Source: Heterodontus francisci
Taxonomy: Eukaryota
Direction: 5' to 3'
Assembly: GCF_036365525.1 (NCBI RefSeq)
Contig: NC_090382.1
Location: forward strand, 107,480,372-107,544,371
Length of the DNA stretch: 64,000 nucleotides
Below, in pieces: positions 36,106-62,909 of this stretch; the first letter of the stretch is position 1, and every line of letters begins with the position of its first letter. The notes below the pieces were generated by a model that ran no database searches, had not been told where the DNA came from, and saw only the letters and a program-made list of their open reading frames with translations. A program made the position numbers and the translations under genes.

Positions 36106-36113
36106 TTAATCCA
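36106..36113 (-). CDS. CD74: CD74 last coding exon (…M-D-stop), followed by 3' UTR towards lower coordinates
   Basis: Acceptor ctatttctgtttcattacag|TG GAT TAA; a tiny terminal coding piece as in mammalian CD74. PolyA site not determined. Confidence 0.65.
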
Positions 36114-39100
36114 CTGTAATGAAACAGAAATAGTTTACGTGAGTTTAAAAATTACTCCCAAAATGTTGCTGTTTCAACAATTTTCTTAGCATCAGTTTCT
36201 TCTGGATTCTGTATGCAAACATTTTGTAAAGGTGTTTGCAAAAGAAAGAGTTGCATTCTATGCAGCGTCTTTCACGACCTCAGAACATCCCAAAACGCTT
36301 CACAGACGATGAAGTACTTTCGAAGTGTAGTCACTGTTGTAATATAGGAAATGCAGCAGCCAATCTGTGCACAGCAAGATCCCACGAACAGCAACGTGAT
36401 AATGACCAAATAATCCCAGTTTTACTGATGTTGCTTGACGGGTAAATATTGACAACAACACTAGGAATAACCCCCCTTGCTCTTGTTTAAAATAGTGCCA
36501 CGGGATTTTTTTACATTCAGCTGCGAGAGCAGATGGGGCCTTGATTTAACATCTCATCTAGGAAACAGCACCTACAACAGGGCAGCACTAGGAGTTTCAG
36601 CCTGGATTTTGTGCTCAATTTTCAGGATGAGAAAATGAACTCACAACCTTCTGACTGAGAGTCAAGAGTGTGACCCGTTGAGCTACAGATGACACAAATG
36701 CCCCACTTAGGTATTTCATTTGGACTGTGTTTGCATTTTCCATTGCCCACTAAGCATAAAGCTTTTGTGACACATTTACAATATTATCACTAATAGTGAG
36801 CAGAACAATTCCTTTCCCTATCCGCTAACACCCCACTCGCACTCCCGCCTTCCAGGGTTAAATTAGGAGGCCAGGTTGCACAGATAAGGATGGAAATTTT
36901 AAAATCAAAACATTGCTTAACTAGGAGCCAATGTCAGTCAGCAAGCAAAGGGGTCACTGGTGAATGGGAGTTGATGCAGGTTAGGAGGTAGGCAGCAGAG
37001 TTTTTGATGAGCTCAAGTGCAAAGGAGGGAAGATTGAAACAGCATTATACCATTCGCAATAGCTTGCTTGAGCATTAGAATGGTCATAACTAGAGGCATA
37101 AAAAGGAAATAGATGCAGTTTTCAGCAGTAGATGAGTAGAGGCAGGACAGATATGGGTGATATTACAGAGGTGGAAGTAGGCTGTCTAATTCATCCAATA
37201 AGGAATTCAGGAGAAACTTTTTTTTATTTGTTCCTGGGATGTGAGCATCGCTGGCCAGGCCAGTTTCTATTGCCCATCCCTAATTGCCATTGAGAAGGCA
37301 GTGGTGAGCTGCCTTCTTGAACCCCTGCAGTCCATGTGGGGTAGGTACACCCACAGTGCTGTTAGGAAGGGAGTTCCAAGATTTTGACCCAGCGACACCG
37401 AAGGAACGGTGATATCATTCCAAGTCAGGATGGTGTGAGGCTTATAGGGGAACTCACAGGTGGTGGTGTTCGCATCCACCTACTGCCCTGTCCTTCTAGG
37501 TGGTAGAGGTTGGGGGTTTGGAAGGTGCTGTCGAATGAGGCTTGGTGAGTTATGCAGAGTGGTTAGAACGTGGAACTTGCTATCTCGTGGAATAGTTGAG
37601 GCGAAATACCATAGATGTATTTAAAGGGAAACTAGATATGCACATGAAGGAGGAAGGAATAGAAGGAGATGCTGATAGTTTGAGATAAAATGAATGGCAC
37701 AAGACGAGGTTCATGGGGAATATAAATAGTGCATGGACCCTTTGGGCCAAATGGCCTCTTTCTGTGCTGCAAATTGTAAGTAACTTGAGGAACTTGTTAA
37801 AAAAAATCACTGGTTACTTACTTGCTGCCAAACCAGACATGTTCATATCATTAGCCTTTCTATAGCCTGAAGATTGAAAGAAACCATAACTGAACATGAG
37901 AAACTAACATTGCAAATAAAAGTGATAACTTGTTAGAACTTCAATAAAATCCAGTCTGCTCTAGGCAAGGTCCAATTCCTGATACACTATACATTTGAAT
38001 CTTTGATAGTGGAGGACAGTTGAATAATTTGAAGTTGAATCTATTTGGGGATCAGGGAACATTTATATAGAATGTTCCCTGAGGAACATAAATAGGTGGG
38101 TTGAACTCATGATAGAGTAGAGTGTACAAAGCCTGTGGCAAGAGATTGCTGGGTGGGTAGAGTCCATGATAGGGTAGAGTGTGCATGGGCTGTGGGAGGA
38201 ATAGGAGTAATGGATTGAATAGGCTTTTCCCAATCCATGCTTCATTCAGTTCTTTTGTTAGTGCATGTACAAGTGCAATAGTTCTTCCTAGTCTGGTGGC
38301 ATTGTAGCACCAAGTGGTTGTACAATCCGCAGACTGTAACACAAGTGTGCAGTGGCTCTACCCTTGTATCTCTGCAGGCAAATCTTTGCAAGATTACAGA
38401 ATGGTTTCACTGACACAATGGAGTATATGTGAGCTACAGTTTCAGTATTTGGATATGCACGTCACAGGCCTGAAGACAAGCATTGAAGAGTTGAAGAAAA
38501 TCCAGCTCTAGTCTAGGCTTTGGACCAAATGCTGGAAGGTGGGATTAGAATAGATGGATTGGTTACTGGTCGGCACAGACACGATGGGCCAAGTGGCCTC
38601 TTTCTGTGCCTTAAACTTTCTATGATTCTATTCAAGAGTCCAAATCATCCTAAAGGCCATCCTCAAAATGTATTCTGCTGGTTGCCATGGGCTGCAGTAG
38701 CATTTTGGGGTTCACTGTAATTGGCCTCAGTAGCTAAGAGTTTTCACTCCTGATCCCTGTTGGGTGACTTCTTCTGGAAGGTTCCAATGCATGGGCCTTG
38801 TGCGTGCCTGTCATTGGGCGTGGCTGAATTTGTATTCCCCTGAGGGGTGATCTGATTGAGGTGTTTAAAATTATTTGATGGGGTAAATACAGAGAAACTA
38901 TTGATCCTGATGGTGGGTGGGGGGAATCAAGAACAAGGGATCATAATCTTTAAAATTATAGCAAGACACATTTAGGAGTGAAATCAGCAAGAACATCTTC
39001 ACACAAAGAGTAGTGGAAATCTGGTACAGTCTCCCTACTAAATGTTGTGGATGTTGGGGGCCAATTGGAGCTTTCAAGTCGAAGACAGAGTTTTTTAAGG

Positions 39101-42100
39101 TAAGGGCATCAAGGAGTATGGAGCAGGAGTTGAGGTACAGATCAGCCATCATCTAACTGAATGGCAGAACAGGCTCCAGTGGCTGTTTGGACTCTTCCTG
39201 TCCCTTTAGTCCTTTCATTCATTCATGAGATGTGGGCATTGCTGCCAAGGCCAACATTTGTTGCCCATCCCTAATTGCTCTTGAGTGGGTGATGGTGAGC
39301 CACCTTCTTGAACCGCAACAGTCCATGGCCATGTGGTGTAGATACACCCACAATGCTGTTAGGGAGGGAGTTCCAGGATTTTAACCCAGTGACAGTAAAG
39401 GAACAGTAAATGTAGTTCAAAGGCAGGATGGTGTGTGGCTTGGAGGGGGATCATGCAGGAGGCGATATTCCCATGCGCCAGCTACATTTGTCCTTCTAGG
39501 CGGCAGAGGCCATGGGCTTGGGAGGTGTTACTGAAAAAACCTTGGCAAGTTGCTGCAATGTATCTTGTACACACTGTTACCACCGTGTGCCAGTGATGGA
39601 GGGAGTGAATGTTTGAGGTGGTAGATGGGGTACCAATCAAGCGGGCTGCTTTGTCCTGAATTGTTTAAAGCTTCTTGAGTTTTGTTGGAGCTGCACTCAT
39701 CCAGGCAAGTGGAGAGTATTCCGTCACACTCCTGACTTGTGCCTTGTAGATCGTGGACAGGCTTTGAGGAGACAGGAGGTGAGTCATATGCCTCACAGAA
39801 TTCCCAGCCTCCGACTTGCTCGTGTAGCCACAGTATGTGTGTGGCTGGTCCAGTTAAGTTTCTGGTCAATGGTAACCCCCAGGATGTTGATGATGGGGGA
39901 TTCAGTGATGGTAATGCCATTGAATGTCAAATAGAGATGGTTAGATTCTCTCTTGCTGGAAATGATCATTGCCTGGCACTTAAGTGGCACAAATGTTACT
40001 TGCCAGTTATCAGCCCAAGCCTGAATGTTGTCCAGGTCTTGCTACATGCGGGCATGACTTTCAGTATCTGAGGATTCATATCCTTCAAAAGGGGGATTTT
40101 TTAATCACATTCGTACGAACAGCAGATCAAGAAAACTAAAACGTACTTTCGCAGCCTTCTAATCGGTGACGAGTGGCTGTTCCTGGGATCTCAGTTCCAT
40201 TCAGGTAAGTGCACCAACAATATCCAGTGCTCGGCCAACACTGCTTTGACTCATAATTGCCCTTCTCATCACAACTGGGGCGGAAGGCTCCAGGAACAAT
40301 CTGCGTCTCCTGGTGACGCTTCTCACATTCAGTGGCAACTGAACAAGGGAAAATAATGATTGCGTATTAATGGTGCTCTTCATATCCCAAGCTTCTCTGC
40401 TTGTAGCCTGCCTTCCGGATTTTAAAATTCTCACTCTTCTTTTCAAATTCCTCCATGGCCTCACCCCTCCCTATCTCTGTAACCTCCTCCGGTCCTACAA
40501 CCTTGTGAGATCTCTGCACTGCTCCAGTTCTGGCCTCTTGCTCATCCTCAATTTTAATCACTCCACCAGTGGCGTCCATTCCTTCAGCTACCTGGACCAC
40601 AAGGTCTGGAATTCCCTCTCTGCCTCTCTACCTCTTATGCTCCTTAAAAGCTACCTCTTTGACCAAGCCTGTCCCAATATCTCCTTATGCGACCTAGTGT
40701 CAAATCTTGTTTGATGATCACTTCTGTGAACCCCCTTAGGATGTTTTACTATGTTAAAGACACTATTTAAACGCAATTTGTTATTGTCACTTCCTCCATG
40801 TTAAACTTGATACCTCTGGGACTCCTTTCAAGGCACACATAATTGGGAGATGTTGCTGGAGCTGGGATTTGTAACTATACTGACTCCATGCTCTCCTAGT
40901 CAAATTGAAGTCAATGGGAATCGGGGGAAACTCTCCACTGGTTGGAGTCTTACCCAGCCCAAAGGAAGATGGTTGGGGCTGTTGGAGGCCAATCATCTCA
41001 GCCCCACGTCATCACTGCAGAAGATCCTCAAGATAGTGTCCTAGGTCCAACCTTTAGTTGCTTCATCAATGATCTTCCCTCCATCATAAAGTCAGAAGTG
41101 GGGATGTTTGCTGATGATTGTACCATGTTCAGTAGCATTCGCAACTCCTTAGATCCTGAAGCAGTCTGTGTTCAGATGCAGCAAGACCTGGACAACATTC
41201 AGGCTTGGGCTGATAAGTGGCAAGTAACATTCACACCGCACAAGTGCCAGGCAATGACCATCCACAATAATAGCAAATCTAACTAGCTCCCCTTCAATAT
41301 TGCGGAATCTCCCACTATCAACATTCTGGAGGTTCCCATTTACCAGAAACCGAACTGAAACGGCCACATAAATACAGTGGCTGCAAGAGCAAGTCAGAGG
41401 CTGAGGATTCTGTGGCGAGTAACTCACCTCCTGACTCCCCAAAGCCTGTCCACCATCTACAAGGCACAAGGCAGGAGTGTCATGGAAAATTCTCCACTTT
41501 CCTGGATGAGTTCGGCTCCAACAACACTCTGGATTCTTGGCACATCCAGGACAAAGCAGTCCACTTGATTGGCACCCAATCCACCAACTTAAACATTCAC
41601 CCCCTCCACCACCGAAGCACAGTGGCAGCAATGTGTACCATCTACAAGATGCACTGCAGCAACTCACCAAGGCTCCTTCGACTGCACCTTCCAAACTCAC
41701 GACCTCTTTCACCTGGAAGAACAAGGGCAGCAGACAAGTGGGAACACCACCACCTGCAAGTTCCCCTCCAAGCCACACACCATCCTGACTTGGAACTATA
41801 TCGCTGTTCCTTCACTGTCGCTGGGTCAAAATCCTGGAACTCCCTTCCTAACAGCACTGTGGGTGTACCTACCCCACATGGACTGCAGCGGCTCAAGAAG
41901 GCAGCTCACCACCACCTTCTCAAGGGCAATTAGGGTTGGGCAACAAATGCTGGCCTGGCCAGCGATGTCCATATCCCATGAAATGAATACTAAAAAAAGG
42001 AAATGCAATATTCTGAAGGCAGGGAGAGAGAGAGGTTGTATCCCAACATTCACGGTAAAAGTGAAGAGGGCATTGAGCATGTCTCCAGGGTGATAACAAA

Positions 42101-45100
42101 GAACTTAAGAGTTCCCTCTTGAGAGGGTGTAGAGGTGAAAATTCGTGCCTTAATCAGTCAATGGTGCAGCATTCTAGAACATTGCTGACAGTTGTCCTCG
42201 TGTGAGCCATTCCTTTGGATTGTAGCTTTCCATGGAATAAGCAGGACAGTCTTGAATTCAACAACGTGGAGACTTGGTGAGAGCAGTCTCATACCTCTGG
42301 GATAAAGTGGAACCCCGAAACTGGGCAAAAGTTTCCCCTCACTCACATATGATGTGAAATGAGCTTCCAGCAATTCTTCAGACCCCTGATTAATAAGTTA
42401 ACAGAAGCCCAGCATTGAATAATAGAAATGAAAGATGAATTAATATTGTAGAATTTTCCTTGATGGACATCAGGGAATATTTATACAGAACTTCCTTTTT
42501 TCAGGAGATTAAATGGGTCGGTAGAGTCCATGATAAGGTGGAGTGTACATGGGCTGTGAAAGGAGATTAAATGGGTGGGTAGAGTCCATGATAGGGTCGA
42601 GTGTACCTGGGCTGTGGGAGGAGATTAAATGGGTGGGTAGAGTCCATGATAGGGTAGAGTGTACATGGGCTGTGGGAGGAGATTAAATGGGTGGGTAGAG
42701 TCCATGATAGGGTCGAGTGTACCTGGGCTGTGGGAGGAGATTAAATGGGTGGGTAGAGTCCATGATAGGGTCGAGTGTACCTGGGCTGTGGGAGGAGAAT
42801 AAATGGGTGGGTAGAGTCCATGATAGGGTAGAGTGTACATGGGCTGTGAAAGGAGATTAAGTGGGTGGGTAGAGTCCATGATAGGGTAGAGTGTACATGG
42901 GCTGTGGGAGGAACATGGCTGATTTGCTTTTCTATACCCATGCTTACACTACAACAGTGACTACACTTCAAAAGTACTTTATTGGCTGTAAAGTGCTTTG
43001 AGACATCCAGTGGTCGTGAAAGGCGTCATATACATGCAAGTCATTTCTTTTTTTTTGTTTGCAGGATCACACGCTAAATACGATACAGAGGTTATGTTAC
43101 TGGACTCGTAATCAAGACATTTGAACAACTAATCTCAGTAACGTGACTTCAACTCCCACTACAGCAGTCTGAACATTGGAGTTTAATTTAAAAATATAAT
43201 CCTGAAAGGAAACACTGGTCTCAGTAAAAGTGACCATGAAGCTGTTCGATTATCATTGAAACCCAACTGGTTCACTAACGCCCCTTCAGCAAAGGAAACC
43301 TGCCGTCCTTACCTGGTCTGGGCCTATCTGCGTCTCCAGTCCTACACCAACATGGTGGACTCTTAATTGCCTTCAGAAGTGGCCTATCAAGCCGCTCAGT
43401 TTCTTCAAAGAATATCACATGGAGTGCAGGGGTTCAAAGAAGAAGGCCTACCATCATCTTCGCTAACAACTCCCAAACCCAAGAATGCATCATTATCACC
43501 CCTACAAAAATGGTGTCTATTGCTGTTTGTGACCGAAGTTGACTTTCTTTACTTTTGCATTTGGCAAAGCACGTGTGGATAGAACCGCGTTAGCTTTGCT
43601 GAATTATCAAATGGTCATCAGTGATGATTCAGAGCTTCTTGTGTCAACTGGTGTCAGCTTGGCTTTGTGGCTGTAGAACCTCATGGTAGAGCCATACAGC
43701 TTTAAGCACAGGAGGAGGCTATTCAGCCCATCTGGTCTGTACCCTCTTTGCGAGACCAATCCAACCTAAAACAAACAGCCAGGTTTTCTCTTATCGCCCT
43801 GTATTTTCAACATCAAGTATTTATCCAGTTTTTTCTTAGAAGCAATTGTCCCTGCCTCAACAATTCCCAGTGAAAGAAATTCCCACACTCCAGCTATGCT
43901 CTGCGTAGAGACATTTCTCCTAAACTCTCTTGCCATTGACTCCCGAACAGTAGGAAACAATCTTTCCCCTTCTCTTCTCCAGTGCAAATAGTCCCAATGT
44001 CTCAAGCCTCTCCTCATAATCTTACTCATCCCCAGTATCATTTTGGTGAATCTAGCCTGTACACATTCTATGGCTTTAGCCTGAAGCCCCACGTGCATGA
44101 TACAACACTAATGAAAGGTCACTGATCTGAAATGTTAACTCTGCTTCTCTCTCCACAGATGCTGCCAGACCTGCTGAGTATTTCCAGCACTTTCTCTTTT
44201 TATTTCAGACTTCTAGCATCCGCAGTATTTTGCTTTTACAAAACTAATGGAGTCGTTTGCTAATCATAGCAATCAATCGCTATCAATGAGTCTACAACAG
44301 AGCTGGACATGACATGAGGAAAACCCCCACTGGTGGAGAGCTTAGAGAACCAAAGGTCCAAAGTCCAATCCGCCCAAGCACTTTACACTCACCTCATGTC
44401 ATGCCTCAAAATTACTCATAGACTGTAGCAATGGTGGTGATCTGCTTACTTCCCATGCCTCCCGGTCCTGCGCTTTCCTCTTCAGTTGCTCCTGAAAGCC
44501 TCCCATTTTTTAACTTCCATGAGAAATAAACAATATGACTAGGGAAAAAGTACATGATGTGGTTTCCCGTTGCCTCATTCACGTGTGCTTTAAAGGAAAT
44601 ACAAAGCCTCTTCCTGAAGGATCCTCTGCCCAAAGCAGCCATTGTCCCTCAAGGTTTCAGCTCTTCCACCATCACCATGGAAAATTCACTGGTTCCGCCT
44701 TTGGCCATGGCTCGTAACCCTGAGCATGGGGCAACTCACCTGGGCCAACTCACAAAAGGGCAGGAAAGACCACCCCCTGAGGTCACAAATGACCCTGCTC
44801 TCCTATTAGACCCCCATATATAATTTTCTGAAAGAAATCTATCTACTTTTCATGTGACTGAATCTATTCTGTCTCCTTCCACCATCACCCTAGGGAGCCT
44901 GTTCCATAGATTGACCACTCGTTTGCTGAAATATTATTGCTTCCAAGGATTAGTTTTGAATTTTTTCCCTTTCAAACACAGGCCATGCTCTCTGGTTCTG
45001 CTGTACTGGACAATCTGATTGTGTGTGAGTGAAGAGTTTCCTGACACCATTCCAAAATTTGTCCTCCACCCAGTTTGAAACTGTTCCCCTTGTGCTAGTC

Positions 45101-48100
45101 TCATGGTTTCAGACGCCCAACCAGTGAACCACACTGGCCGTTCTCAATCCTGTGTTTCCTATGGATGAAACATTAGTTGCCATAGTTACCCCGTGATGCA
45201 CGCACAACTTTGGGAGCTTGGCCCTCCTTAGGGTCAGTTGACAACGGCAGGTTGACCATCATTGGTTTCATAGCTAAGCTTGAATATATCCTTCGCCCTG
45301 TTGCAAACAGAAATGATACAGCAGTTTCAAACATGTAGCATAATATTATAGTGAAATATTCCTCACCATTTATTGAGAGCGCGTTGGGATGGGTTGACGT
45401 GATTCGCCTTCTACACCCTTCACCCTCGGTGCTCGCTGACCTACATCGGATCTCAGTCCTCAGCTTTTAAAATTCTCACCCTTGTTTTCAAATACCTCCA
45501 TGACCTTGTCCCTCCCCATCTCTGAAACCTCCTCCAGCCTCACAACCCTCTTGAGATATCCGCACTCCTCCAATTCTGGCCTCTTGCACATCTCTGATTT
45601 TAACTGACCTGCCATTGGCAGCTGTGCCTGCAGCTACCTGGGCTCTAAGCTCTGGAATTCCCTCCCTAAACTTCACCACCTCTTTATCTCTATCTCCACC
45701 TTTAAGACGCTTCTTAAACCTACCTCCTGGTCCCAGTTTTTGGTCAGCTGTCCTATTATCACTCTATGTGGCTCAGCGTTAAATATTGTCTAATAACGCT
45801 CCTGTGAAATGTCTTGGTATATTTTACAATAATAAATATTCTTTTTTTAACGTAAATTGTTTTATATCCATGAACAATTTAAAGGAAAACGTTATGGCAA
45901 CCAAGCAGCAAGTGATGTACTTGAGAATGTTCTGTGAGTTTTTGAGCGTGGGAATCGCTCAGCACTTTCACCCCAGGTTCATACACTGGACCTTGTAGTG
46001 GGATCACTGCACAGGCCTGGCAATGACCTCATGGAGTCTGGTAAATGGGATTTCGCCTGTTGCCAGTTTGAAAGGATCAAGAACATTTGGGCCAAGGAGG
46101 ATGAGTTGGCATAGGGAGCAAGATAAATGGGCATCTGGGAGATGTGGAGGTTGCTCGGAAGGAAGGAAGCTACAGCTGTTCTGGGAGTAGAGGCCACATC
46201 GTAGGATCATAGGATCATACAGCAAGAAGGAGGCTATTCAGCCCATCGTGCCTCTTTGAAAGAGCTATCCAATTAGTCCCATGCCCACAGCTCCTTCCCC
46301 ATAGATTTTTCCTTTTCAAGTATTTAGCCAATCCAGGGATGAGCTAATCACCAAATAATTTGTGTCTTTTTAGTGATGTTGGTTGAGGGATAAATATTGG
46401 TCAGGACACCAGGAGAACTCCCCTGCTCTTCTTCGAAATAGTGCCAAACGATTTTTTATGTCCACCTGAGAGACTACATTTTTAAAGTACTTCATTGGCT
46501 TTGGGACATTATGAGATTGCGAATGCACTATATCAATACAAGTCATGTTTTGTAGCATTGATCCCTTAACTGAAATAGATTATGTGCTTGTGACCTCATT
46601 TTGTGGTTGTGGGAACTTGGTGTACGCACATTGATTGCATTACGTTGAGTGTGGCTCACTTTGGGATTCCCCAAAGATATGAAAGGCACTACATAAATCC
46701 AAGTTCTTTCTTTTTTTTCTCCGCATACTGAAGGTGCGCTAGCTGAGTGGGATGACAGCTTCAGGAGAAGAGGCGATAGAGAGCGAGGGCAGAAATTGTT
46801 GAGCTATGTGTTTGAGAAAGAGAAAGAATAAAATATATGACTGATACGTACCACTGGGGATGGGTTTGGGTTCAGGTTCAGGCTGGGGTTTGGGTGCGCT
46901 GGTTGGTGGAGTCTTCTCTTGTATGAGTTGGAAGAGAAGCCAGTTTCGGAGCCAAGATTCAAAGTCCTGTAAACAGTGCAGTTAAAGACAAACAATATAT
47001 CACATGATCAGTACCTAAGAATTTGGAACGGGCTCCTTCAAACTGAATTGTGGGGTTACTTTAAACTGGAGAATGAAATTTATTGTACTTGTTAAGTATG
47101 GAAGCACCTCTCATATCAAACTCAAACACTGAATTGCAACAGTTTCCTCAGTAAAGTCTTTAAAATTATGAAGGGATTCGATAAATGCAGAAAATATGTT
47201 TCCACTTTATCATGCAAAGGGTGGTAGAAGAGTGGAACTCTCTTCCACATAAAAGCAGCAGATGCTAAAATCTGAGAGCGATAGATTATTGCTAGCCTGG
47301 GGGATTAGGGGTTATGGAGCCAAGTAAGATGGATGCTATTAAGATACAGATCAGCATGTTCTCACTGAATAGCAGAACAGGCCTGAGGGATTGAATGTTC
47401 CTGTGCTGTGGGAATCCAAAACTGGAGGAAATCAATGTAAGGCAGTCACTAATAAATTCAATAACGAATTGCTACAATTGTACAGGGTTTTGGTGAGACC
47501 ACATCTGGAATAAAGGCCAGCTACCCAACCCGAACACGACGGGACCCGATGACATGTGTTGGGGTCGGGTCGCACTTCCGGTTCTGGCACTTGGGCTCGG
47601 GTCGGGTTGGGTTGGGCCGGACACGCTCTATCACAGGCAAGTGGCTTCTCTGTTAATTTACTTTTTGGGCTTGAAAGGTGGTTTTGTTACAGTTATTTTG
47701 AGCTTATGCAGATCAGCAACAAAGTGAAAAACGGATGGTAGGTTCACTGACGGTCGGGTCAGGTCTGGGTCGGGTGCGGGAAAAAATGGAAGGACTCGGG
47801 CTGGGGCGGGCTCGGGGTTGGACGTGGTTCTGTCAGGCTCGGGTCGAGTTTAATTTGCAGACTCGACCAAGCCTTTAATCTGGAATACTGTGTGCAGTTT
47901 TGGTCTCCACATTTAAGAAAGGATATACTTGCACTGGAGGCGGTGCAGTGAAGATTCATTAAATTGGTTCCTAGGATGAGGGGGTTGTCCTATGATGAAA
48001 GGCTGAGTAAATTGGGCCTATACTCTCTGGAGTTTAGAAGAATGAGAGGTGATACAATTGAGACATACAATATTATGAAGGAGCTGGATAGGGCAGACTG

Positions 48101-51100
48101 AGGGGGTAGAGATTGTTTCTGCTGCTCAGGGAATCTAGAACACGGGGGCACAGTCTCAGGATAACGGACCAATCATTCAGGACTGAGATGAGGAGAAATT
48201 ACTGCACTTAAAGGGTTGTGAATCTTTGGAATTCTCTACCCTATTTGGTTGTGGATGCTCCATCATTGAATACATTTAAGGGTGGGATAGATAGATTTTT
48301 GGTCTCACAGGGAATCAAGGGATATGGGGAGCGGGCAGGAAAGTGGAATTGAAGCCCAAGATCAGCCATGATCGTATTGTGTAGCAGAGCAGGCTCGATG
48401 GGCCATACAGTCTACTCTTGCTCCTATTTTTTATGTTCTTGTGAATTCAGGAGGAAATTCTTTACCCCGAGAGGGTGAGAATTTGGAACTCGCTACAACA
48501 AGGAGTGGTTGAGGTGAATGGCAGAGATGCATTTAAGGGGAAGCTGGATAAACACATGAGGGAGAAAGGTATAGAAGGCTATGCTGATAGGGTGAGATGA
48601 GGTAGGGGTGGGAAGAGGCTTATGTGGAACATAAATGCTGGCATGGATCAGTTGGGCCGAATGGCCTGTTTCTGTGCTGCACATTCGATGTAATTCTTTA
48701 TAACGAAGCTGTATCAACCACTAACCTGCCAATCGGATTCCTTCATGCTCTCTTTCAGCAGGTTGAAGTTGGCGGCAAAGGTGCTGTTAAATTCTGGAAT
48801 TTCCTCAGTTGTGTTCTCCTTCTGTCATTGAAAGATCAAGAAAATGTCATACTTTGCCATCTCTTCTACCAAAGATATAGTCAGACCATTGTTCAATTAT
48901 GTTAAATCTCCCGCTAAAGTAAAGTTGGTGCCACATTCAAACAGTCTTAAAGTCCATCGAACACTTTGTCTTTTCTCATGGTTGGGAAATTTGGATAAAT
49001 GATCAAAACCTTCAATACCTTGGGCCATTTTTCTACATTCAAGTCATGATATGAAAACATGTTGGTGCTATAGAGCCATTCGGCCCATCATGTCTCTGCC
49101 AGCTCTTTGAAAGAACTATGCAATTAGTCCCTGCAAATTTTCCCTTTTGAAATCACTTCTAAAAACCTTCGTAAATCACTGGTTTGGCCCCACAGCTCAA
49201 TCTTCACTTTATGAAGGATGTTAAGGCCTTGGAAAGGATGCAGAGGAGATTTACTAGAATGGATTTGGGGTTTAATAATTTCAGTTATGTGGAAAGACTC
49301 GAGAAGCTGGGATTGCCTCCTTGGAGGGGAGAAAGTTAAGGGAACATTAAATCGAGGGGTTCAAAATTACGAATGATTTTAATAGAGTAAATAGGAAGAA
49401 ACTGATTCCACTGGCAGCAGGGTTGGCAACCAGTGGGCACAGATTTAAGTTAACTGGCAAAAGAAACAGAGGAAAAATGAGGAGTTTTGGTTTACACAAG
49501 TTGTTATGATCTGGAATGCACTGCCTGAAAGGGCTGTGGAAGCAGATTCAATAGTAACTTTCAAAAGGGAATTGGATAAATATTTGAAAAGGAAAAATTT
49601 GTAAGGCAATGGGGAAAGGGCAAGGGAGTGGGACTAATTGGATAGCTCTTTCAAAGAGCTAGCATAGGCATGATGGGCCAAACAGCTTCCTTCTGTGCTG
49701 GATCTCTGTATGATTCTACAATAGCTTGGAAAGATTCCCTCTAACAGTACCTTCAGCAGCTCCTGCACTTGTTCCAGCAAAGTCAAAGGTTTAGCGGAAG
49801 TGGGTTTCGGAGCCTGTGAAAAAAACAATCACAAAAACAAATAAGATTTTTATTATATATTTAACCATCATAAGCTGCTCGCAAATCAAGATACATCATA
49901 ATGTCCTGGACAGATCCTGGCTGCAGCATCACACATCAGGATATACTGGCTCAGTGGGTAGCACTAGTGCCCATAAGTCAGCAAGTTGTGGGTTCAAATC
50001 CCACTCCAGAGACTCAGATATAAAATCTAGCCTGATGTGCCCAGGACTGAGGGAACACTACAGTGTCAGAGGTGCCCTCGTTCGGATATAACATTGAACC
50101 AAGGCTCCTCTCAGAGGCAGATTACAATAGATCCCACAGTGCTATTTTGAAAACGAGTAGGGTTGTTCTCTGTTTAAGCCTCAGATGAGGCTGTGAAAGG
50201 TTCTGTGCAAGTACAAGCTCTTCCTTCTTCCCATTGTTTAACACACTGTGCAGGTGGTCGTGATCGAAAGCCCGAGTGCATCCACCCTAAAATAAACACC
50301 AGGTAAAAATAACTGAAAATGGGTGGGGATGCCCCAAATTGGTGAAATTAGATGTTCTGATCTTAGCTGAAGAAACTGCAGTCGGTTCCTCCTACTCCTC
50401 AATCAGTATATGAACAGGGCAATTGTGTTGCAGATTAAATGGAGAACTTTGAACAGTAAGAAACCCTGTTATCTGGAGGATTAGTGGCAGTATGAGTGCA
50501 GAAAATAATGGGGACATTACAAACATCCCACCTTACAAAGTTTCTCCAAGTCTCTCGGAGTCTGGATCCAGCACTTAATACAAGGTGGTACCACACCAAT
50601 CATTCAAGATCCTAACTGAGGGAACACCCACTTCACAGTGGTGGAGCTTGGCTTGACCGACTGCTATGGGGGGGAAGGGGGAGTAGAGGGCGTTGCTGCA
50701 TTTGATATTTGGCCAACTTGGCGGGGAGGGAAACTGAGTTGGGAATTGGGAACCATGGAGAATGCTGACTGAAACCAGTTGGAAAACAGAGCCAGAAAGC
50801 CACATGGGCCTGCAGGCAAACCTAGAGCCTGAAGACAGGAGTGGGCAGACAGAGGGAGGGAAATAGAGGAGTTCCTCCAAAGCTATGTTGGCCAACATCA
50901 AAATTATGACCTTTCCCTCCACTGACCCCTTAACCCCTTGCTATGCTGGTACTAGGTTGATTTGACTCCACCGAGCTTCCAGTAGGATTTAGGGCAAGGG
51001 GTCTGTTGGAACAGGAACCCCATTTCGGGACCCTTGTATTTACATAATGCTTTATCTCATTCTCAGAACATCTCCATGCCCCATGAGTTCGTTTTGAAGA

Positions 51101-54100
51101 TCAGTCACTGTTATTATGTTGGCCAAAATGCAACAACCAATGTAGCGCAGACCAAGATCCAGCAAAGAGAAAATCAGATGACTAGTCATTTAATGTGTCT
51201 TTGGTGATGTTTTTCCATTCACAGAAGTGAAAGTTCTTTTCTTTAATTTCTGAAAATTACCTTTGGTTGTTCCATCTTTGGGTCAATGTATGCAATGGGC
51301 ATGTCCATCATCATAGGCCTGATATGCATCATCGTTTTTGGCTCTGAAGAAATAAAATGCAATGAAATTTTTATTCGAACATCTTAGCGACAACACGGAC
51401 TTGGGAATCGTTCTTGTCCTGGAGTTTGGTTTTAGTTCAGCTTTGCGTCAGATTACTGTTGCTAACATTGTTTTCTCCACAATCTATTCACTGTTTGGTT
51501 AATGTTGTGTTATTCTGCCTCGAGGGCCCTCAGATTTATTTCGACTTTAACCAAAACAGTTCAATTTGAAAGATTGAAAAGGAAAGAGGATGTACGTACT
51601 GACGGGGCCCCTGCTTGATGAGTATTTGTTTTCAATTCTATCTGTTGTCTTCTGCAGATCCGTTATCTTGCCCTGTTGTTTCAGCAAGAACATAACAGAG
51701 ACAACTTGCCCAGCGATCAGCATAGCTGCCAACACGGTCACACCAGTCCAAAGGAGGCTTCGAGAGCATTTGCTGTTGCTGAAATATAGACCAGACAAGA
51801 TGGAAGAATGTCTTAACGCTCTATAAGGTCTAAAGGGCTGTCAAACTCTATCTGGATGTATTCCTGAAGATTCCATCACATGACCTTTTACCCTCCAACT
51901 GCTCCCATCTCCCACGTTCTACCGCTATTGGTCGCCCAACATGTCCATTCTTGCAGTGTTCCACCTTCCCACGGCCAATTGGGAAGTCAACAGACTCTTC
52001 GTTACTTGTTTGGATGATTGTTAACTGTCGACCAAACAGCCTTTGCTTACACACCCCCATCTCCAACATTTTTATAACTGAGAATAAAAGTGTTAAAAGA
52101 ATCTGGAGGTTAATCGTCAGTTCCTGCAAATTCCAGGGCAATCCTGGAGGGCTGACGCCCCTACTAAGGTCTCCCCTTGTCTTAACTCTAATCTTTCTTT
52201 ATAACTCAATCATCTAACAACTAGGGATTAGTCTTTTGGCTGCTCCCCATATCCCTTCCAGGACTGTTTGCCCCTGTGTCTGACCAGAGAATGAAAGTGT
52301 TTCAGTGTAACAGACTCAGATTCGTGATCTATTGATCAGGAGACACAGCTCAGCTCCCTATTTTTGCATTCATGCTGTTCTGCAATAGGTGGTTAAGTCT
52401 CCTCTCATCTCCAAATCTCTTTCAACCTCTCCTCTAGTTAGTTCATTACCATTCAATGAGTTACTGCAGCTGCCCATTCTTTCCCCCAATGTGTAAGATC
52501 TTGCATCTTGATCATGATTGAACTTGTTCTGTCAAGTATTATTGGATGTTGTCCAGTGGGATAATTCCTTGCCTGTTTCATTATACTGAAAATTATCTGA
52601 GAACTTGACCAATCGACATCGTGTTTCTAGAATTCAGGTTTTTGCAGGTCAAAGATTGGACTTGGTGATTTATTAAAAAAATACATATCAGTTTCAATGG
52701 ATAATTGTGGAACTGAGTCACAAAGGATCAAGAAAGTCCCAAGGATTTCTCCACTCAGCTAGTGCTAACAATGGACCATTGTCACAGTGGTACAAGGGGC
52801 AATGGTCACTGGGCTAACAAGGGGCAATGGTCACAGTGATACAAGTGGTAATGGCCACTGGAACAACAAGGGGCAAAGGTCAATGTGCTAACAATGGGCA
52901 ATAGTCATTGGGCTAACAAGGTACAATGGTCACTGGGCTAACAATAGGCAATAGTCACTGTGGTAACAAAAGGAAATGGTCAATGTGCTAACAAGGGGTA
53001 ATGATCAATTTGAGGAACACAGAACCCTTGGAGAGTTTTGGGCTGGAGGAGTTTACAGAGATGCTGGGGGTGGGTTGTGGGGGGTGTTGCCGTTGGGGGT
53101 GAAACCATGGACGGATTTGAACAGGAGGATGAGAATCCATTAGTTACAGGCCCAAGGTTATTTTTCGACTAGGTAATCAACAAGTGGCCATTTTGTTTGA
53201 TTTGTATGAAGCAGTTTCTTGAATAAGGATTGTGCTAATGACTCATTTTATATTTTACTAAGGATGTTATCAAAAATTGGACCATGACATGGAAATCCCC
53301 TCCTGTCTAAAAGTGAAACCATCACAACTGGCAGTCAGGGCTTCAGGAAACTTCCACTGCTCTGTAAAGTAATTCAAGGGACATCTAATCAATATTTGTT
53401 GCTTAACCAACATCAGTAAAACAGATATCCTGACCATTACCTCAGTGTTGTCGGTGGGACCTTGCAGTGTGCGCAAAATAGCAGTTGCATTTCCCTCATT
53501 ACAGCCGTGACTGCAATTCAGCAAGTATTTCATTGTCTGCAAAGTGCCTTAGGACATAACGAGATCGTGAAAGTTGCTATAGAAATGCAAGCCTCTCTTT
53601 CAACTAGAGATGGGCAGCAAATGATGGCCTTGATGGCATTACCCACATCCTAAACATGAATTTTAAAACATGCAATTATATAGTGTTTTATCATGCCAAA
53701 ATGTCTCAAACATGTTTCACAGTATGTATTAGGGAGTGACTTTATGCAGGCAACTGCCAGTTTATACCAGTATGTCAAAGACGCCAATATTTTGATCTGC
53801 TGTACTTGCTTGAGAAAAACCATCAAGAGCAGTCCATGAGACAAAGTAAGGGTAAGAAAATGATTTTAAAATGATCAAATGTCCTGGGTGACAAATCGGA
53901 GAGAATGTTTTTTTTTTAAATGAGGTAAACATTGTACCATTCACACTCCCTGCATCACCACATAACGGGTGGTCCTCGTCAAAGTGGACCGATCATCCAT
54001 TATAGAGCCCGTCCAATTCCATCCCATTAAGATAACTGAGCAGGTTCTATAATGTGTGGGGGTACAATTCGTTCTACCGGATTACTGTCCGTTTGGGAGG

Positions 54101-57100: not shown

Positions 57101-57588
57101 CAAAATCCTGGAACTCCCTTCCTAACAGCACTCTGGGGGCACCTGCACCGCACGGATTGCAGCGGTTCAAGAAGGCGGGTCACCGCCATCTTCACAAGGG
57201 GCAAGCGACGGATGGGCAATAAATGCTGGCCTTGCCAGCGACACCCGCATCCGAAGAATGAGTTAACAAAAAAGACAATTCCCTGCAAGAGCCAGCAAGT
57301 AAGAGGCTGCCCCGTAACATCCTCAGGGGCCTCGCAGACTCCACTCTTCTAACTGGCTACACCTGCCAAAAATCCACTTGATTGTTAAAACACTAGACAG
57401 GAAAGCAAGTCTCTTCATTCTCTCACCAGAATTTCAACAAACAATTCCACACACATGAAAAAAAAATTGTTGATGCTCTGAACTTACCTCTGTCCAGTAG
57501 CCATTGTCCTGGTTTCCACATTGGAATTACTGACTAAATCTTGCTGCGAGTTATTCAGCAAAGAATTCTGTTGCTCGTCGGCCGACAT
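36106..57588 (-). CDS. CD74: CD74 / MHC class II invariant chain, complete spliced CDS (10 coding exons, 329 aa; 265 aa if the Tg exon is skipped)
   Basis: Exons 57488-57588, 51600-51778, 51261-51343, 49751-49813, 48726-48821, 46852-46966, 45190-45297, 40147-40338, 37822-37866 and 36106-36113 join through GT-AG introns into one open frame: MSADEQQNSLL...KCSRSLLWTGVTVLAAMLIAGQVVSVMFLLKQQGKI...MMHIRPMMMDMP...DWQDFESWLRNWLLFQL...CWCTYLNGTEIPGT...GLAAMD*. Domain order matches vertebrate CD74. Confidence 0.95.
37822..37866 (-). CDS. CD74: CD74 exon 9
   Basis: 45 nt, phase 1/1, (S)YRKANDMNMSGLAA; strong ggtttctttcaatcttcag acceptor and A|GTAAGT donor; contains a Ser-Gly as in the mammalian penultimate exon. 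Low sequence similarity, so called from splice signals and phase. Confidence 0.7.
39210..40075 (-). mobile_element. LINE family A 3' fragment in CD74 intron 8
   Basis: KCQAMIISSKRESNHLYLTFNGITITESPIINILGVTIDQKLNWTSH and the family A 3' UTR. Confidence 0.85.
40147..40338 (-). CDS. CD74: CD74 exon 8, thyroglobulin type-1 domain (p41-type alternative exon)
   Basis: 192 nt, phase 1/1: VATECEKRHQETQIVPGAFRPSCDEKGNYESKQCWPSTGYCWCTYLNGTEIPGTATRHRLEGCE; six Cys, QC and CWC motifs. Confidence 0.96.
40890..41998 (+). mobile_element. LINE family A 3' fragment in CD74 intron 7
   Basis: QDSVLGPTFSCFINDLPSIIKSEVGMFADDCTMF...QQDLDNIQAWADKWQVTF and the 3' UTR ending aatgaatactaaaaaaa. Confidence 0.85.
42504..42912. 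repeat. 58-bp minisatellite, 7 units
   Basis: ggagattaaatgggtgggtagagtccatgatagggtagagtgtacatgggctgtggga starting at 42504, 42562, 42620, 42678, 42736, 42794 and 42852; about 2 diverged units also at about 38090-38225. Confidence 0.95.
45190..45297 (-). CDS. CD74: CD74 additional linker exon 7 with a second CLIP-like motif
   Basis: 108 nt, phase 1/1, open frame (G)RRIYSSLAMKPMMVNLPLSTDPKEGQAPKVVRASR; acceptor catttctgtttgcaacag, donor G|GTAACT; similar to exon 3. Confidence 0.82.
46852..46966 (-). CDS. CD74: CD74 exon 6 (end of trimerisation domain and Pro-rich linker)
   Basis: DFESWLRNWLLFQLIQEKTPPTSAPKPQPEPEPKPIPS (human VFESWMHHWLLFEM); ctgtttacag acceptor, G|GTACGT donor. Confidence 0.93.
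47511..47877. mobile_element. hAT-type MITE inserted in a CR1 fragment
   Basis: 8-bp TSD ATCTGGAA (47503-47510 and 47878-47885), terminal inverted repeats TAAAGGC/GCCTTTA, and multiple subterminal acccga/tcgggt motifs. Confidence 0.8.
48726..48821 (-). CDS. CD74: CD74 exon 5 (trimerisation domain)
   Basis: 96 nt, KENTTEEIPEFNSTFAANFNLLKESMKESDWQ (human [32 protein letters not shown]); two N-glycosylation sequons. Confidence 0.92.
49751..49813 (-). CDS. CD74: CD74 exon 4
   Basis: 63 nt, APKPTSAKPLTLLEQVQELLK (human ...TEDHVMHLLQ); ttttttcacag acceptor, AAG|GTACTG donor; phase 0/0. Confidence 0.9.
51261..51343 (-). CDS. CD74: CD74 exon 3 (CLIP)
   Basis: KPKTMMHIRPMMMDMPIAYIDPKMEQPK is a Met-rich CLIP-like segment (human [20 protein letters not shown]); tttcttcag acceptor, AAG|GTAATT donor. 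Confidence 0.93.
51600..51778 (-). CDS. CD74: CD74 exon 2 (juxtamembrane Cys and type II transmembrane segment)
   Basis: SNSKCSRSLLWTGVTVLAAMLIAGQVVSVMFLLKQQGKITDLQKTTDRIENKYSSSRGPV aligns with human [37 protein letters not shown]; acceptor tatatttcag, donor A|GTACGT (phase 1). Confidence 0.95.
51830..52165. mobile_element. Old hAT-like MITE (related copy at about 34340-34695)
   Basis: Degenerate agggttg(g/c)caaccct-type termini and shared internal blocks (catcacatgacct, cattggtc, caatcctgga). Confidence 0.4.
52763..53010. repeat. ~25-bp degenerate minisatellite, about 10 units
   Basis: Consensus gctaacaaggggcaatggtcactgg. Confidence 0.85.
53230..53360. promoter_or_regulatory. Candidate intron-1 immune enhancer
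   Basis: AP-1 TGACTCA 53239-53245, kB GGGGATTTCC 53291-53300 (minus), IRF element AAAAGTGAAACC 53309-53320, kB-like GGAAACTTCC 53346-53355. Confidence 0.45.
55757..56220. repeat. (TG)n-rich low-complexity tracts
   Basis: Interrupted TG repeats at about 55757-55910 and 56160-56220. Confidence 0.8.
57488..57588 (-). CDS. CD74: CD74 coding exon 1 (cytosolic tail)
   Basis: GCA-ATG start; MSADEQQNSLLNNSQQDLVSNSNVETRTMATGQ; two leucine-based motifs (EQQNSLL, QQDLV; compare human DQRDLI); donor AG|GTAAGT, phase 2. Confidence 0.9.
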
Positions 57589-62065: not shown

Positions 62066-62909
62066 AATATAGGCCGAGTCGACTCAATCTCTCCTCTTGA
62101 TGTAAAGCTAATGTCTGTCATTGCTGTGTGGGTGAAGCGTTGGAGTTGAGGGTGATTGTTAATGGACATTAATCCACAAGGCCATGAAACAGGGCACCAA
62201 GAGAAGGCAAGAAAATGAAATTTTTGCTCTACGGAGATTGACAGGGCCTCGATGGGCCGAATGACCACCTTCAGTGTCATAATGGCTCTATGACTCTATA
62301 AAAGAAATTACAAGACCTAGGGAGCCAGCATTTGCATACAGCACCCTACATCCAACATTATTCAACAAAAACATGTATTTTATATACCAACGTTAACATG
62401 GTAAAACATCCCAAGGCGTCTCACAGGAGCTTTACCGAACAAAATTTGATATTGAGATAGGTGCAGCTCTACCAAGATCTCAGTTAATTCCAGAGCAGAC
62501 TAGAAGGTTTGAATGGCCTCCTACTGTCCTTATTTTTTTTTTCAAACATTTATCAGCTTCCCCTACAGTTTCCTGTTGAATATTCCAGGTCATGGTTTTG
62601 TACAACTGAGTGGCTTGCGAGGCCATTTCAGAGGGCAGTTAAGAGTCAACTAGATTGCTGTGGATCTGGAGTCACAGGTAGGCCAGACCAGGTAAGGATG
62701 GCAGATTTCCTTCCCCAAAGGGCATTAGTGAACCAAATGGGATTTTACGACAATCGATGACAGTTTCATGGCATCATTACTGAGACTAGCTTTCAATTCC
62801 AGATTTCTCTTAATTAATTGAATTTAACTTCCTCCAGCTGCCATGATGGGATTTGAACCCGTGTCCCCAGAGTATTAGCTGGATTACCAGTCCAGTGACA
62901 TTGCCATTG

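What the first reader, a model, noticed from the sequence alone, without database searches (positions are those of the whole stretch)
45190..45297. Invariant chain with a second, duplicated CLIP exon
Seen in sequence: between the trimerisation exon and the Tg exon there is an extra 108-nt, phase 1/1 exon with good splice sites. Its peptide SLAMKPMMVNLPLST-DPKEGQ--APK aligns with the CLIP exon and the start of exon 4, MMHIRPMMMDMPIAYIDPKMEQPKAPK (shared [RK]PMMx[DN][ML]P, DPK, Q, APK). Established: mammalian CD74 has one CLIP and no exon here. From memory, an extended linker before the Tg domain has been reported in cartilaginous-fish CD74, so novelty must be checked. Inference: the linker arose by duplication of the CLIP exon, giving two groove-binding peptides per chain, one on each side of the trimer core. 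It might chaperone more, or different, class II dimers, or supply a differently released placeholder in a lineage thought to lack DM. Being symmetric in phase, the exon could be independently skipped.
Basis: partly seen in the sequence, partly recalled or inferred. Interest (0 to 1): 0.85.

Follow-up and report, generated by a model that had tools for sequence, protein, structure and literature searches.

The report
Shark invariant chain's CLIP-like extra exon
The 108-base exon is a real, always-included part of the horn shark MHC class II invariant chain (CD74), shared by sharks, rays and chimaeras. It carries a conserved short motif that resembles the groove-blocking CLIP peptide, so it may be a second class II-binding element, but nobody has tested that.

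Summary
Window 45297-45190 (minus strand) is a 108-nt, phase 1/1 exon with AG/GT sites. It is exon 7 of Heterodontus francisci CD74, matching RefSeq XP_067900139.1 exon by exon.

- **Expression:** Spliced contigs in four runs from three samples join it to exon 6 at exactly 46852>45297.
- **Distribution:** It is present in 61 of 63 chondrichthyan CD74 sequences, from about 20 species. These include Tg-less isoforms, nurse shark and elephant shark cDNA-derived proteins. It is absent from tetrapod CD74. It is therefore constitutive and older than the chimaera/elasmobranch split, not a skippable cassette.
- **Prior knowledge:** From memory, it is the "extended linker" reported for nurse shark Ii in 2012. 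That paper could not be opened here.
- **CLIP resemblance:** The exon-7 profile's best match anywhere in CD74 is the CLIP core (z 6.1, permutation p 0.0007; hhalign P 1.6e-4, probability 51%). The best within-protein hit lies in the CLIP exon in 17 of 20 sequences.
- **Constraint:** The 14-residue core evolves about 2.3 times slower than the exon's tail, and the region is predicted disordered, like CLIP.

Origin by duplication and binding to class II remain inferences; no class II sequence was available to model. The scan had not noted this before on other DNA.

The parts
45190..45297 (-). CD74 exon 7, the finding: 108 nt, phase 1/1. It encodes P0169 residues 213-248: a conserved core (GRRIYSSLAMKPMM), a CLIP-like stretch (AMKPMMVNLP) and a variable tail.
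   Evidence: Sequence and splice sites; translation; exact match to P0165/P0169; spliced contigs; conservation.
51261..51343 (-). CD74 exon 3, the CLIP exon: 83 nt, phase 1 to 0. It encodes the MMHIRPMMMDMPIAYIDP core.
   Evidence: Pfam MHC2-interact covers residues 14-113 of P0169.
46852..46966 (-). CD74 exon 6: the last trimerisation-domain helix (DFESWLRNWLLFQLIQE) followed by a Pro/Thr/Glu-rich linker. It ends in phase 1.
   Evidence: The joint 46852>45297 is seen in contigs.
40147..40338 (-). CD74 exon 8: thyroglobulin type-1 (p41-type) exon, 192 nt, phase 1/1, alternatively spliced. Isoform X3 lacks it.
   Evidence: Pfam Thyroglobulin_1.
51600..51778 (-). CD74 exon 2: transmembrane segment and membrane-proximal lumenal stalk.
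57488..57588 (-). CD74 exon 1, coding part: start codon and cytoplasmic tail.
49751..49813 (-). CD74 exon 4: starts with APKP and begins the trimerisation domain.
48726..48821 (-). CD74 exon 5: trimerisation domain.
   Evidence: Pfam MHCassoc_trimer covers residues 135-193.
37822..37866 (-). CD74 exon 9: C-terminal tail. It is joined directly to exon 7 in the Tg-less isoform X3.
36106..36113 (-). CD74 exon 10, coding part: last two codons and the stop.

Best explanation
Window 45297-45190 is constitutive exon 7 of the horn shark invariant chain gene (CD74/Ii). It is shared by all cartilaginous fishes examined and absent from tetrapods. It encodes part of an intrinsically disordered tether between the trimerisation domain and the thyroglobulin domain. 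Inside that tether sits a conserved short linear motif, consensus GR-K-I-F/Y-S-S-hydrophobic-A-M-K-P-M-M-x-x-L-P. The second half of the motif is related to the CLIP core (R-P-M-M-M-D-L/M-P) of the same protein. The most likely history is an ancient intragenic duplication of the CLIP-coding segment, with its donor site shifted so that the exon became symmetrical. This would predate the chimaera/elasmobranch split. The most likely function is a second class II-contacting segment. It could act as an extra or back-up groove placeholder. It could also be a built-in competitor peptide, released early in endosomal Ii degradation, that helps to displace CLIP in a lineage without DM. Shown here: the exon, its splicing, its constitutive inclusion, its age, the constraint on the core, its predicted disorder and the non-random similarity to CLIP. 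Inferred only: duplication rather than convergence, and any binding to class II. My sub-confidences: real constitutive exon 0.97; non-chance CLIP similarity 0.75; duplication origin 0.45; class II groove binding 0.3-0.35. The overall figure of 0.4 is for the whole statement, including the functional part.
For: Exon and splicing. The GT..AG joint 46852>45297 appears in contigs of X1 (6 contigs), X2 and X5 (one 2841-nt contig). X8 shows no row in the joints table, but one 693-nt contig lies on both exon 7 and exon 6. Exon depth is thousands of times intron depth in X1 and X2. Constitutive inclusion: all three H. francisci isoforms carry it, including Tg-less X3, as do 61 of 63 chondrichthyan sequences. 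Age: it is present in sharks, skates, rays, Callorhinchus milii (NP_001279078.1, with cDNA-derived GenBank entries) and a second chimaera transcript. It is absent in pika, turtle, birds and frog and is an insertion relative to the human chain 8VRW_C. Constraint: the core has a mean site rate of 0.88, against 1.38 for the preceding linker and 2.0 for the exon's tail. The slowest sites are R214, S218, S219, M222, P224 and M225. Disorder: AF2 gives pLDDT below 50 and coil for residues 190-247, the same as for the CLIP region 80-131. CLIP similarity: shuffle p 2.5e-4. In a profile scan of the whole protein the top hit is the CLIP core, z 6.1, permuted-maximum p 0.0007 for 12 columns and 0.019 for all 22. 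hhalign gives P 1.6e-4 with probability 51%, and against the 206-column N-terminal profile the best hit is again CLIP, P 5.5e-4. Within species, p<0.01 in 10 of 20 sequences, with scores up to 60 in S. torazame and Hemitrygon. The best hit falls in the CLIP exon in 17 of 20. Both exons start in phase 1 with the motif 7-9 codons in.
Against: No binding evidence of any kind exists, and no class II chain could be obtained for modelling. The similarity rests on about 9-12 Met/Pro-rich residues. It is weak or absent in skates, Narcine, one unnamed shark and both chimaeras. The x-x-L-P part evolves fast across the whole group, at a rate of about 2.0. The most constrained residues (R214, S218, S219) lie outside the CLIP-like stretch. 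In the CLIP-aligned register the P1 position would be a conserved Ser, a poor anchor by mammalian rules (established knowledge, not tested in sharks). Nurse shark has Ser in place of the motif's Pro. The 3' phase differs between the two exons, they are four exons apart, the DNA similarity is marginal (p 0.03) and the introns show none. The species are related, so repeated significance is not independent replication.
Confidence: 0.4

Rival explanations
1. Exon 7 carries a conserved short linear motif that serves another partner or step. It could be a processing site for endosomal proteases that starts C-terminal Ii degradation or frees the Tg domain. It could also be a chaperone, sorting or glycosylation site built on the invariant R and S-S. 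In that case the resemblance to CLIP is convergence or shared Met/Pro composition, not homology and not groove binding.
For: The slowest-evolving residues are R214, S218 and S219, which have no CLIP counterpart. The similarity fades in skates, Narcine and chimaeras. hhalign probability is only 30-51%. Exon phases differ at the 3' end, and nothing at the DNA level supports duplication. The CLIP exon itself repeats K/R-P-M-M twice, so such motifs may arise easily in this protein.
Against: Composition-preserving shuffles and column permutations still put the CLIP core as the single best match in the whole protein. The most conserved columns of the two segments coincide (P224 with P103, M225 with M104). 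Strong matches occur in both sharks and batoids. No alternative partner is suggested by any tool result.
Confidence: 0.35
2. Exon 7 is simply a flexible spacer, the published 'extended linker'. It lengthens the tether between the trimer core and the Tg domain or C-terminal tail and has no specific binding function.
For: AF2 predicts coil with pLDDT below 50. The tail of the exon and the preceding Pro-rich linker vary freely in sequence and length; for example, carpet sharks are 8-9 residues shorter.
Against: A spacer would not keep a 14-residue core at rate 0.88, with near-invariant R, S-S, M, P and M, from chimaeras to sharks while its flanks run at 1.4-2.0. Nor would it be kept in Tg-less isoforms, where there is no Tg domain to space.
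Confidence: 0.1
3. Exon 7 is a regulated cassette exon, like the Tg exon, that produces Ii isoforms with one or two CLIP-like segments.
For: It is symmetric in phase (1/1), so skipping keeps the reading frame. One Chiloscyllium punctatum model (P0166) omits it precisely.
Against: No RefSeq isoform in any species retrieved here skips it, although Tg and tail exons are variably spliced in the same gene models. P0166 comes from an older automated annotation.
Confidence: 0.05

Closest known systems
CLIP region of mammalian CD74/Ii (human residues about 81-104; groove core M91-M99)
   Same: It is a Met/Pro-rich stretch in a disordered lumenal part of the same protein. It shares the core pattern basic-P-M/L-M/L-hydrophobic-x-x-L-P. 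In the alignment with tetrapods, the shark CLIP R-P-M-M-M-D-L-P lines up with mammalian T-P-L/M-L-M-Q-A-L-P, and exon 7 lines up with the shark CLIP.
   Different: It lies C-terminal, not N-terminal, to the trimerisation domain. It has its own conserved N-terminal half (G-R-K-I-F/Y-S-S) with no CLIP counterpart. No groove binding has been shown. In the aligned register, P1 would be Ser.
The 'extended linker preceding the thyroglobulin-like domain' of nurse shark Ii (Criscitiello et al. 2012, Dev Comp Immunol 36:521; cited in PMC8010645)
   Same: It is almost certainly the same segment. The nurse shark protein from that work (P0185, UniProt H2BJQ...) contains it.
   Different: As far as I recall, the abstract describes it only as a linker. 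The paper (PMC3260380) could not be opened, so I could not check whether a CLIP-like motif was noted. Searches of the library found no such statement.
Thyroglobulin type-1 exon of CD74 (human exon 6b, p41 isoform)
   Same: It is a neighbouring phase 1/1 exon inserted at the same place, after the exon that ends the trimerisation domain. The shark Tg exon is 192 nt.
   Different: The Tg exon is a folded domain, is alternatively spliced, and is conserved in sharks and tetrapods. Exon 7 is disordered, constitutive and restricted to cartilaginous fish in the data here.
HLA-DM and CLIP self-release (N-terminal CLIP 81-89 accelerating its own release at low pH; Kropshofer et al. 1995, from memory)
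   Same: These are the known ways CLIP is removed. Exon 7 could supply an in-built exchange or competitor element where DM is absent (PMC8010645, PMC4219347).
   Different: There is no sequence or structural relationship to DM. The link is purely a functional hypothesis.

Membership tests
CD74 / MHC class II invariant chain | Domain order: N-terminal tail, TM and CLIP region (Pfam MHC2-interact), then the trimerisation domain (MHCassoc_trimer), then an optional thyroglobulin type-1 domain. | tested here: met
   PF09307 E 1.3e-21, PF08831 E 2.8e-16 and PF00086 E 1.2e-15 on P0169, all above the curated cut-offs. The best PDB match is human Ii 8VRW_C, E 2.5e-41.
CD74 / MHC class II invariant chain | The window encodes this protein. 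| tested here: met
   Every exon of P0165/P0169 maps to the window on the minus strand at 91-100% identity per hit; the mismatches lie in overhangs beyond the splice junctions. Exon lengths and phases add up to 329 codons plus the stop.
[quoted passage not shown] | Sequence related to the CLIP core. | tested here: met
   Best profile hit in the whole protein, z 6.1, p 0.0007. hhalign P 1.6e-4, probability 51%. Best hit lies in the CLIP exon in 17 of 20 sequences. The match is short and weak in skates and chimaeras.
[quoted passage not shown] | Position between the membrane anchor and the trimerisation domain. | tested here: not met
   Exon 7 encodes residues 213-248, downstream of the trimerisation domain at 135-193.
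[quoted passage not shown] | Occupies the peptide groove of class II dimers and survives as a class II-bound fragment after Ii proteolysis. | not testable with these tools
   No shark class II sequence could be obtained, so no complex prediction was run. No eluted-peptide data were available.
Exon duplication (exon 7 derived from exon 3) | Significant sequence similarity between the two exons. | tested here: met
   Protein level. DNA level is only marginal, p 0.03.
Exon duplication (exon 7 derived from exon 3) | Same intron phases and similar flanking introns. | tested here: inconclusive
   The 5' phase is the same (1). The 3' phase differs (0 against 1), which needs a 25-nt donor shift. Flanking introns show no similarity (p 0.22 and 0.40), as expected after more than 400 million years.
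Alternatively spliced cassette exon | Transcripts or isoforms with and without the exon. | tested here: not met
   61 of 63 sequences contain it. One more (P0212) has it garbled by a frameshifted model, and only P0166 omits it. Skipping junctions could not be counted from reads.

The most novel reading that the evidence does not exclude
Cartilaginous fish invariant chain carries two functional class II groove ligands per chain: classical CLIP below the trimer core and a second CLIP-derived segment above it. The second one acts as a built-in placeholder or exchange peptide that substitutes for part of what DM does in tetrapods. This arrangement has been kept for over 400 million years.
Probability: 0.27. 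Interest if true: 0.85.

Novelty: new variant of a known kind. Interest (0 to 1): 0.6.

Why it matters
How class II molecules shed CLIP and acquire peptides without DM is an open question for cartilaginous and ray-finned fishes (PMC8010645, PMC4219347). A conserved, constitutive, CLIP-like motif on the far side of the Ii trimer gives a concrete and cheap hypothesis to test, using two synthetic peptides and recombinant shark class II or one immunopeptidome. If it binds, it would change the stoichiometry and release model of the oldest known Ii. It would also show that CLIP-type sequences can be re-used within one chaperone. If it does not bind, the motif still marks an unrecognised functional site in a protein that has been taken into vaccine-adjuvant work (shark Ii, PMC6177389). 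The exon itself is not new: it is in RefSeq models and, from memory, in the 2012 nurse shark paper.

Tried and rejected
- **Representative-library search:** phmmer with the Tg exon was swamped by multi-Tg proteins. Only one useful CD74 came out (P0119), which then seeded the word-based searches.
- **Region-restricted search:** P0169 residues 207-250 returned only the protein itself from 3 candidates. This says nothing about relatives.
- **Pfam on single exons:** exon 7 alone gave nothing, but so did the CLIP exon alone, so the result is uninformative.
- **PDB search with exon 6 alone:** no hit.
- **The look-up of encoding contigs:** No orthologous DNA could be fetched, so no dN/dS and no direct check of exon boundaries in other genomes. 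Boundaries in other species are inferred only from isoforms that join the segment to either the Tg exon or the tail exon.
- **Key papers not held:** Criscitiello 2012 and Dijkstra & Yamaguchi 2019.
- **Complex prediction:** not used. No shark class II alpha or beta chain was available as a session sequence, and the tool's reference option covers only microbes.
- **Read laying:** one call, kept to 2.2 kb (44800-47000) to avoid the repeat-rich 40.4-43 kb stretch. The downstream joint 45190>40338 and any skipping joint were therefore not observed directly. Contigs simply end at about 45193 with long loose ends.
- **No joined model:** Exons were searched by reference, and whole-protein work used database proteins returned by the tools.
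- none, and no contig was taken for human.
- **Rejected readings:** a chance ORF in an intron (refuted by splicing and conservation) and TE-derived exonisation (the exon is orthologous across all chondrichthyans).
Full report
**1. What is in the sequence**

On the minus strand, one search shows a polypyrimidine tract and CAG. After these come 108 bases (45297-45190) and then GTAACT. The exon begins with two bases that complete a codon and ends with one base, so it is phase 1/1. Its 35 full codons translate without a stop, and the peptide contains ...IYSSLAMKPMMVNLPLSTDPKEGQAPK....

**2. The gene**

A phmmer search with the thyroglobulin exon, given by reference, yielded one invariant-chain-like protein, P0119 from a skate. 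Word-based searches seeded with it and with an elasmobranch alignment returned CD74 from many cartilaginous fishes. One of these, P0165, and its cluster mate P0169 (XP_067900139.1, Heterodontus francisci isoform X1, 329 aa) map onto the window exon by exon. Identity is 91-100% per hit, and the mismatches lie in overhangs that run past splice junctions.

The coding exons, all with AG/GT sites, are:

| Exon | Coordinates (minus strand) | Note |
|---|---|---|
| e1 | 57588-57488 | start codon, cytoplasmic tail |
| e2 | 51778-51600 | transmembrane segment |
| e3 | 51343-51261 | CLIP |
| e4 | 49813-49751 | trimerisation domain |
| e5 | 48821-48726 | trimerisation domain |
| e6 | 46966-46852 | last helix and linker |
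| e7 | 45297-45190 | the finding |
| e8 | 40338-40147 | Tg domain |
| e9 | 37866-37822 | C-terminal tail |
| e10 | 36113-36106 | last two codons and stop |

The lengths sum to 990 nt, which is 329 codons plus the stop. I only added lengths and phases. Pfam finds the three expected Ii domains. The best solved relative is human Ii, 8VRW_C. In that alignment, shark residues 200-246 have no human counterpart and fall exactly between human residues 218 and 219, at the junction of the exon before Tg and the Tg exon.

**3. Is the exon used?**

I laid four runs on 44800-47000.

- A joint that skips 1554 bases, with CT..AC ends on the plus strand (GT..AG on the gene strand), links 46852 to 45297. The joints table lists it in X1 (six contigs), X2 and X5 (a 2841-nt contig).
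- X8 has no row in the joints table. Its one 693-nt contig nevertheless lies on both exon 7 and exon 6.
- The runs represent three samples.
- In X1 and X2 the word depth over e6 and e7 is 10^4-10^5, against about 10-70 in the intron between repeats. These runs therefore behave as RNA, although they are labelled only as a guess.
- Contigs stop aligning at about 45193 and continue as long loose ends, as expected at the donor site.
- The downstream joint itself lay outside the stretch and was not seen.
- Organisms B and C differ from the window at 45238 and 45243. Both changes are non-synonymous and lie in the variable tail (L to S and T to S). There are none in e6.

**4. Constitutive, not a cassette**

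- All three RefSeq isoforms of this species contain e7, including X3, which lacks Tg and joins e7 straight to e9.
- Across the session's 63 distinct chondrichthyan CD74 sequences, 61 contain the motif. One (P0212) has it garbled by a frameshifted model. Only P0166, an older automated Chiloscyllium punctatum model, omits it.
- The 63 sequences comprise RefSeq isoforms of about 20 species, the nurse shark protein, elephant shark proteins and transcript-derived skate and chimaera proteins.
- In the same models, the Tg exon and the tail exons are variably used.
Read-level skipping could not be counted.

**5. Age and distribution**

- The segment is present in galeomorph and squalomorph sharks, skates, stingrays, manta, sawfish and electric ray.
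- It is also present in Callorhinchus milii (NP_001279078.1, which has cDNA-derived GenBank entries) and in a second chimaera transcript.
- It is absent from pika, turtle, three birds and a frog.
- It therefore predates the split of chimaeras and elasmobranchs.
- Whether it was gained in that lineage or lost in bony vertebrates is open. No ray-finned fish, coelacanth or lungfish sequences were retrieved.

**6. Constraint and structure**

Site rates were estimated under LG+G4 on the 20-sequence alignment.

| Segment | Mean site rate |
|---|---|
| TM | 0.41 |
| CLIP core | 0.60 |
| Trimerisation exons (e4, e5) | 0.84-0.97 |
| e7 core (residues 213-226) | 0.88 |
| Tg domain | 1.15 |
| Pro-rich linker of e6 | 1.38 |
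| V-N-L-P (residues 227-230) and the rest of e7 | about 2.0 |

- The slowest sites in e7 are R214, S218, S219, M222, P224 and M225. Pairwise measures agree.
- AF2 with a 26-sequence alignment gives coil and pLDDT below 50 for residues 190-247, the same as for the CLIP region 80-131. The helices and the Tg domain are modelled with higher confidence.
- e7 therefore encodes a conserved short linear motif inside a disordered tether.

**7. The CLIP likeness**

- For the horn shark pair, the local score is 42 and the shuffle p is 2.5e-4.
- I scanned the weighted chondrichthyan profile of the e7 core over every other position of the CD74 profile. The single best hit is the CLIP core (MAMKPMMVDLPK against MHLRPMMMDMPI), z 6.1.
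- Column-order permutations reach that maximum in 0.07% of trials for the 12-column window, and in 1.9% for the unselected 22-column window.
- hhalign gives P 1.6e-4 and probability 51% for e7 against e3. Against the whole 206-column N-terminal profile it again finds CLIP, with P 5.5e-4 and probability 30%.
- Species by species, e7 against its own e3 has p<0.01 in 10 of 20 sequences. Scores reach 55-60 in two catsharks and a stingray. The best hit of e7 anywhere in its own protein lies in the CLIP exon in 17 of 20.
- The likeness is weak in skates, the electric ray, one unnamed shark and both chimaeras.
- The species share ancestry. These results therefore show that the ancestral elasmobranch e7 was CLIP-like, not that the similarity arose many times.

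**8. Duplication or convergence?**

Points for duplication:

- Both exons begin in phase 1.
- The motif sits 7-9 codons into each exon.
- The best-conserved columns coincide.

Points against, or neutral:

- e3 ends in phase 0 and e7 in phase 1, so a 25-nt donor shift would be needed.
- The two exons are four exons apart.
- Exon DNA similarity is marginal (p 0.03), and the introns show none.
- The apparent extension of the match into the first residues of e4 adds only 3-5 score units of Ala/Pro/Lys-rich sequence. I do not weigh it.
- The CLIP exon itself contains K/R-P-M-M twice.

I put duplication at about 0.45.

**9. How it may work (inference)**

- e7 lies about 22 residues beyond the last helix of the trimer core. 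CLIP lies a similar distance before the core. Either could reach a groove.
- Ii is degraded from the lumenal C-terminus (established for mammals). An e7-bearing fragment would therefore be freed early.
- It could act as a second placeholder, or as a competitor that helps to displace CLIP where DM is missing (PMC8010645; PMC4219347).
- In the CLIP-aligned register, P1 would be Ser219, which is a weak anchor.
- A different register puts F/Y217, the hydrophobic residue 220, M222 and M225 at P1, P4, P6 and P9. That register fits the conservation pattern better but differs from the alignment.
- None of this could be tested. No class II chain was available to the complex predictor.

The main rival is a motif for another partner or processing step centred on the invariant R and S-S, with only convergent likeness to CLIP.

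**10. What is known**

- The gene models are public.
- The nurse shark Ii protein from Criscitiello et al. 2012 contains the segment (P0185).
- As I recall, that paper's abstract mentions an extended linker before the Tg-like domain in cartilaginous fish.
- That paper and Dijkstra & Yamaguchi 2019 are not held.
- Seven full-text searches found no mention of a second or duplicated CLIP in any fish Ii.
- The scan's own notes hold nothing on it.

The exon is therefore known, while the CLIP-like reading appears to be new but is unverified against the two key papers.

**11. Limits**

- The reads evidence is from contigs, which show presence but not proportions.
- The Tg-side joint and any skipping joint were not observed.

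**Verdict**

- Duplication and class II binding are plausible but untested.
- Independent skipping is unsupported.

Noticed in passing
window 60491-62083 (minus strand): There is a 531-codon open frame with a reverse transcriptase domain (Pfam RVT_1, E 4e-37). It is a LINE-type element about 3 kb upstream of the CD74 start codon.
   Followed up: partly
window 45465-45664, 40420-40618 and 29796-30046: The same interspersed repeat (77-80% identity) lies just upstream of exon 7 and just upstream of the Tg exon in the same orientation, with a third, inverted copy at about 30 kb. RNA contigs pile up on it at very high depth with many odd joints, so it is a widely transcribed repeat family and not part of CD74 mRNA.
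   Followed up: partly
window 46200-46520: A second short repeat in the e6-e7 intron has at least nine partial copies elsewhere in the window (for example at 58439, 36420, 49571 and 54369). It also attracts deep contig coverage with hundreds of loose ends.
   Followed up: partly
window 42480-43025 (minus strand): Several frames carry near-identical 57-codon open stretches in tandem (SPPTA.VHSTLSWTLPTHL...). This is a tandem repeat of about 170 nt in the intron between exon 7 and the Tg exon.
   Followed up: no
window 45238 and 45243: Contigs from two other samples (organisms B and C) carry T>A and A>G on the plus strand. Both change amino acids in the variable tail of exon 7 (T to S and L to S). 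Exon 6 is identical in the same contigs. They may be alleles or a sister species.
   Followed up: no
CLIP exon, window 51261-51343, and alignment: The CLIP exon itself contains the K/R-P-M-M unit twice in most elasmobranchs (K-P-M-M-H then R-P-M-M-M). Shark Ii therefore has three such units, counting exon 7.
   Followed up: partly
P0185 (nurse shark), P0162/P0163 (carpet sharks), P0158 (electric ray), P0212 (elephant shark): There are several lineage quirks. Nurse shark has Ser instead of the motif's Pro (K-S-M-M). Orectolobiform exon 7 is 8-9 residues shorter. Narcine isoform X2 lacks the exon-4 segment. The UniProt elephant shark model A0A4W3HGV7 has the exon-7 core scrambled by an apparent frameshift relative to the cDNA-derived protein.
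   Followed up: no
window 37822-37866 and 36106-36113: The C-terminal tail keeps the M-S-G-L motif, which aligns with the mammalian S-G-L region. From memory, that region is the site of chondroitin sulfate addition in mammalian Ii.
   Followed up: no
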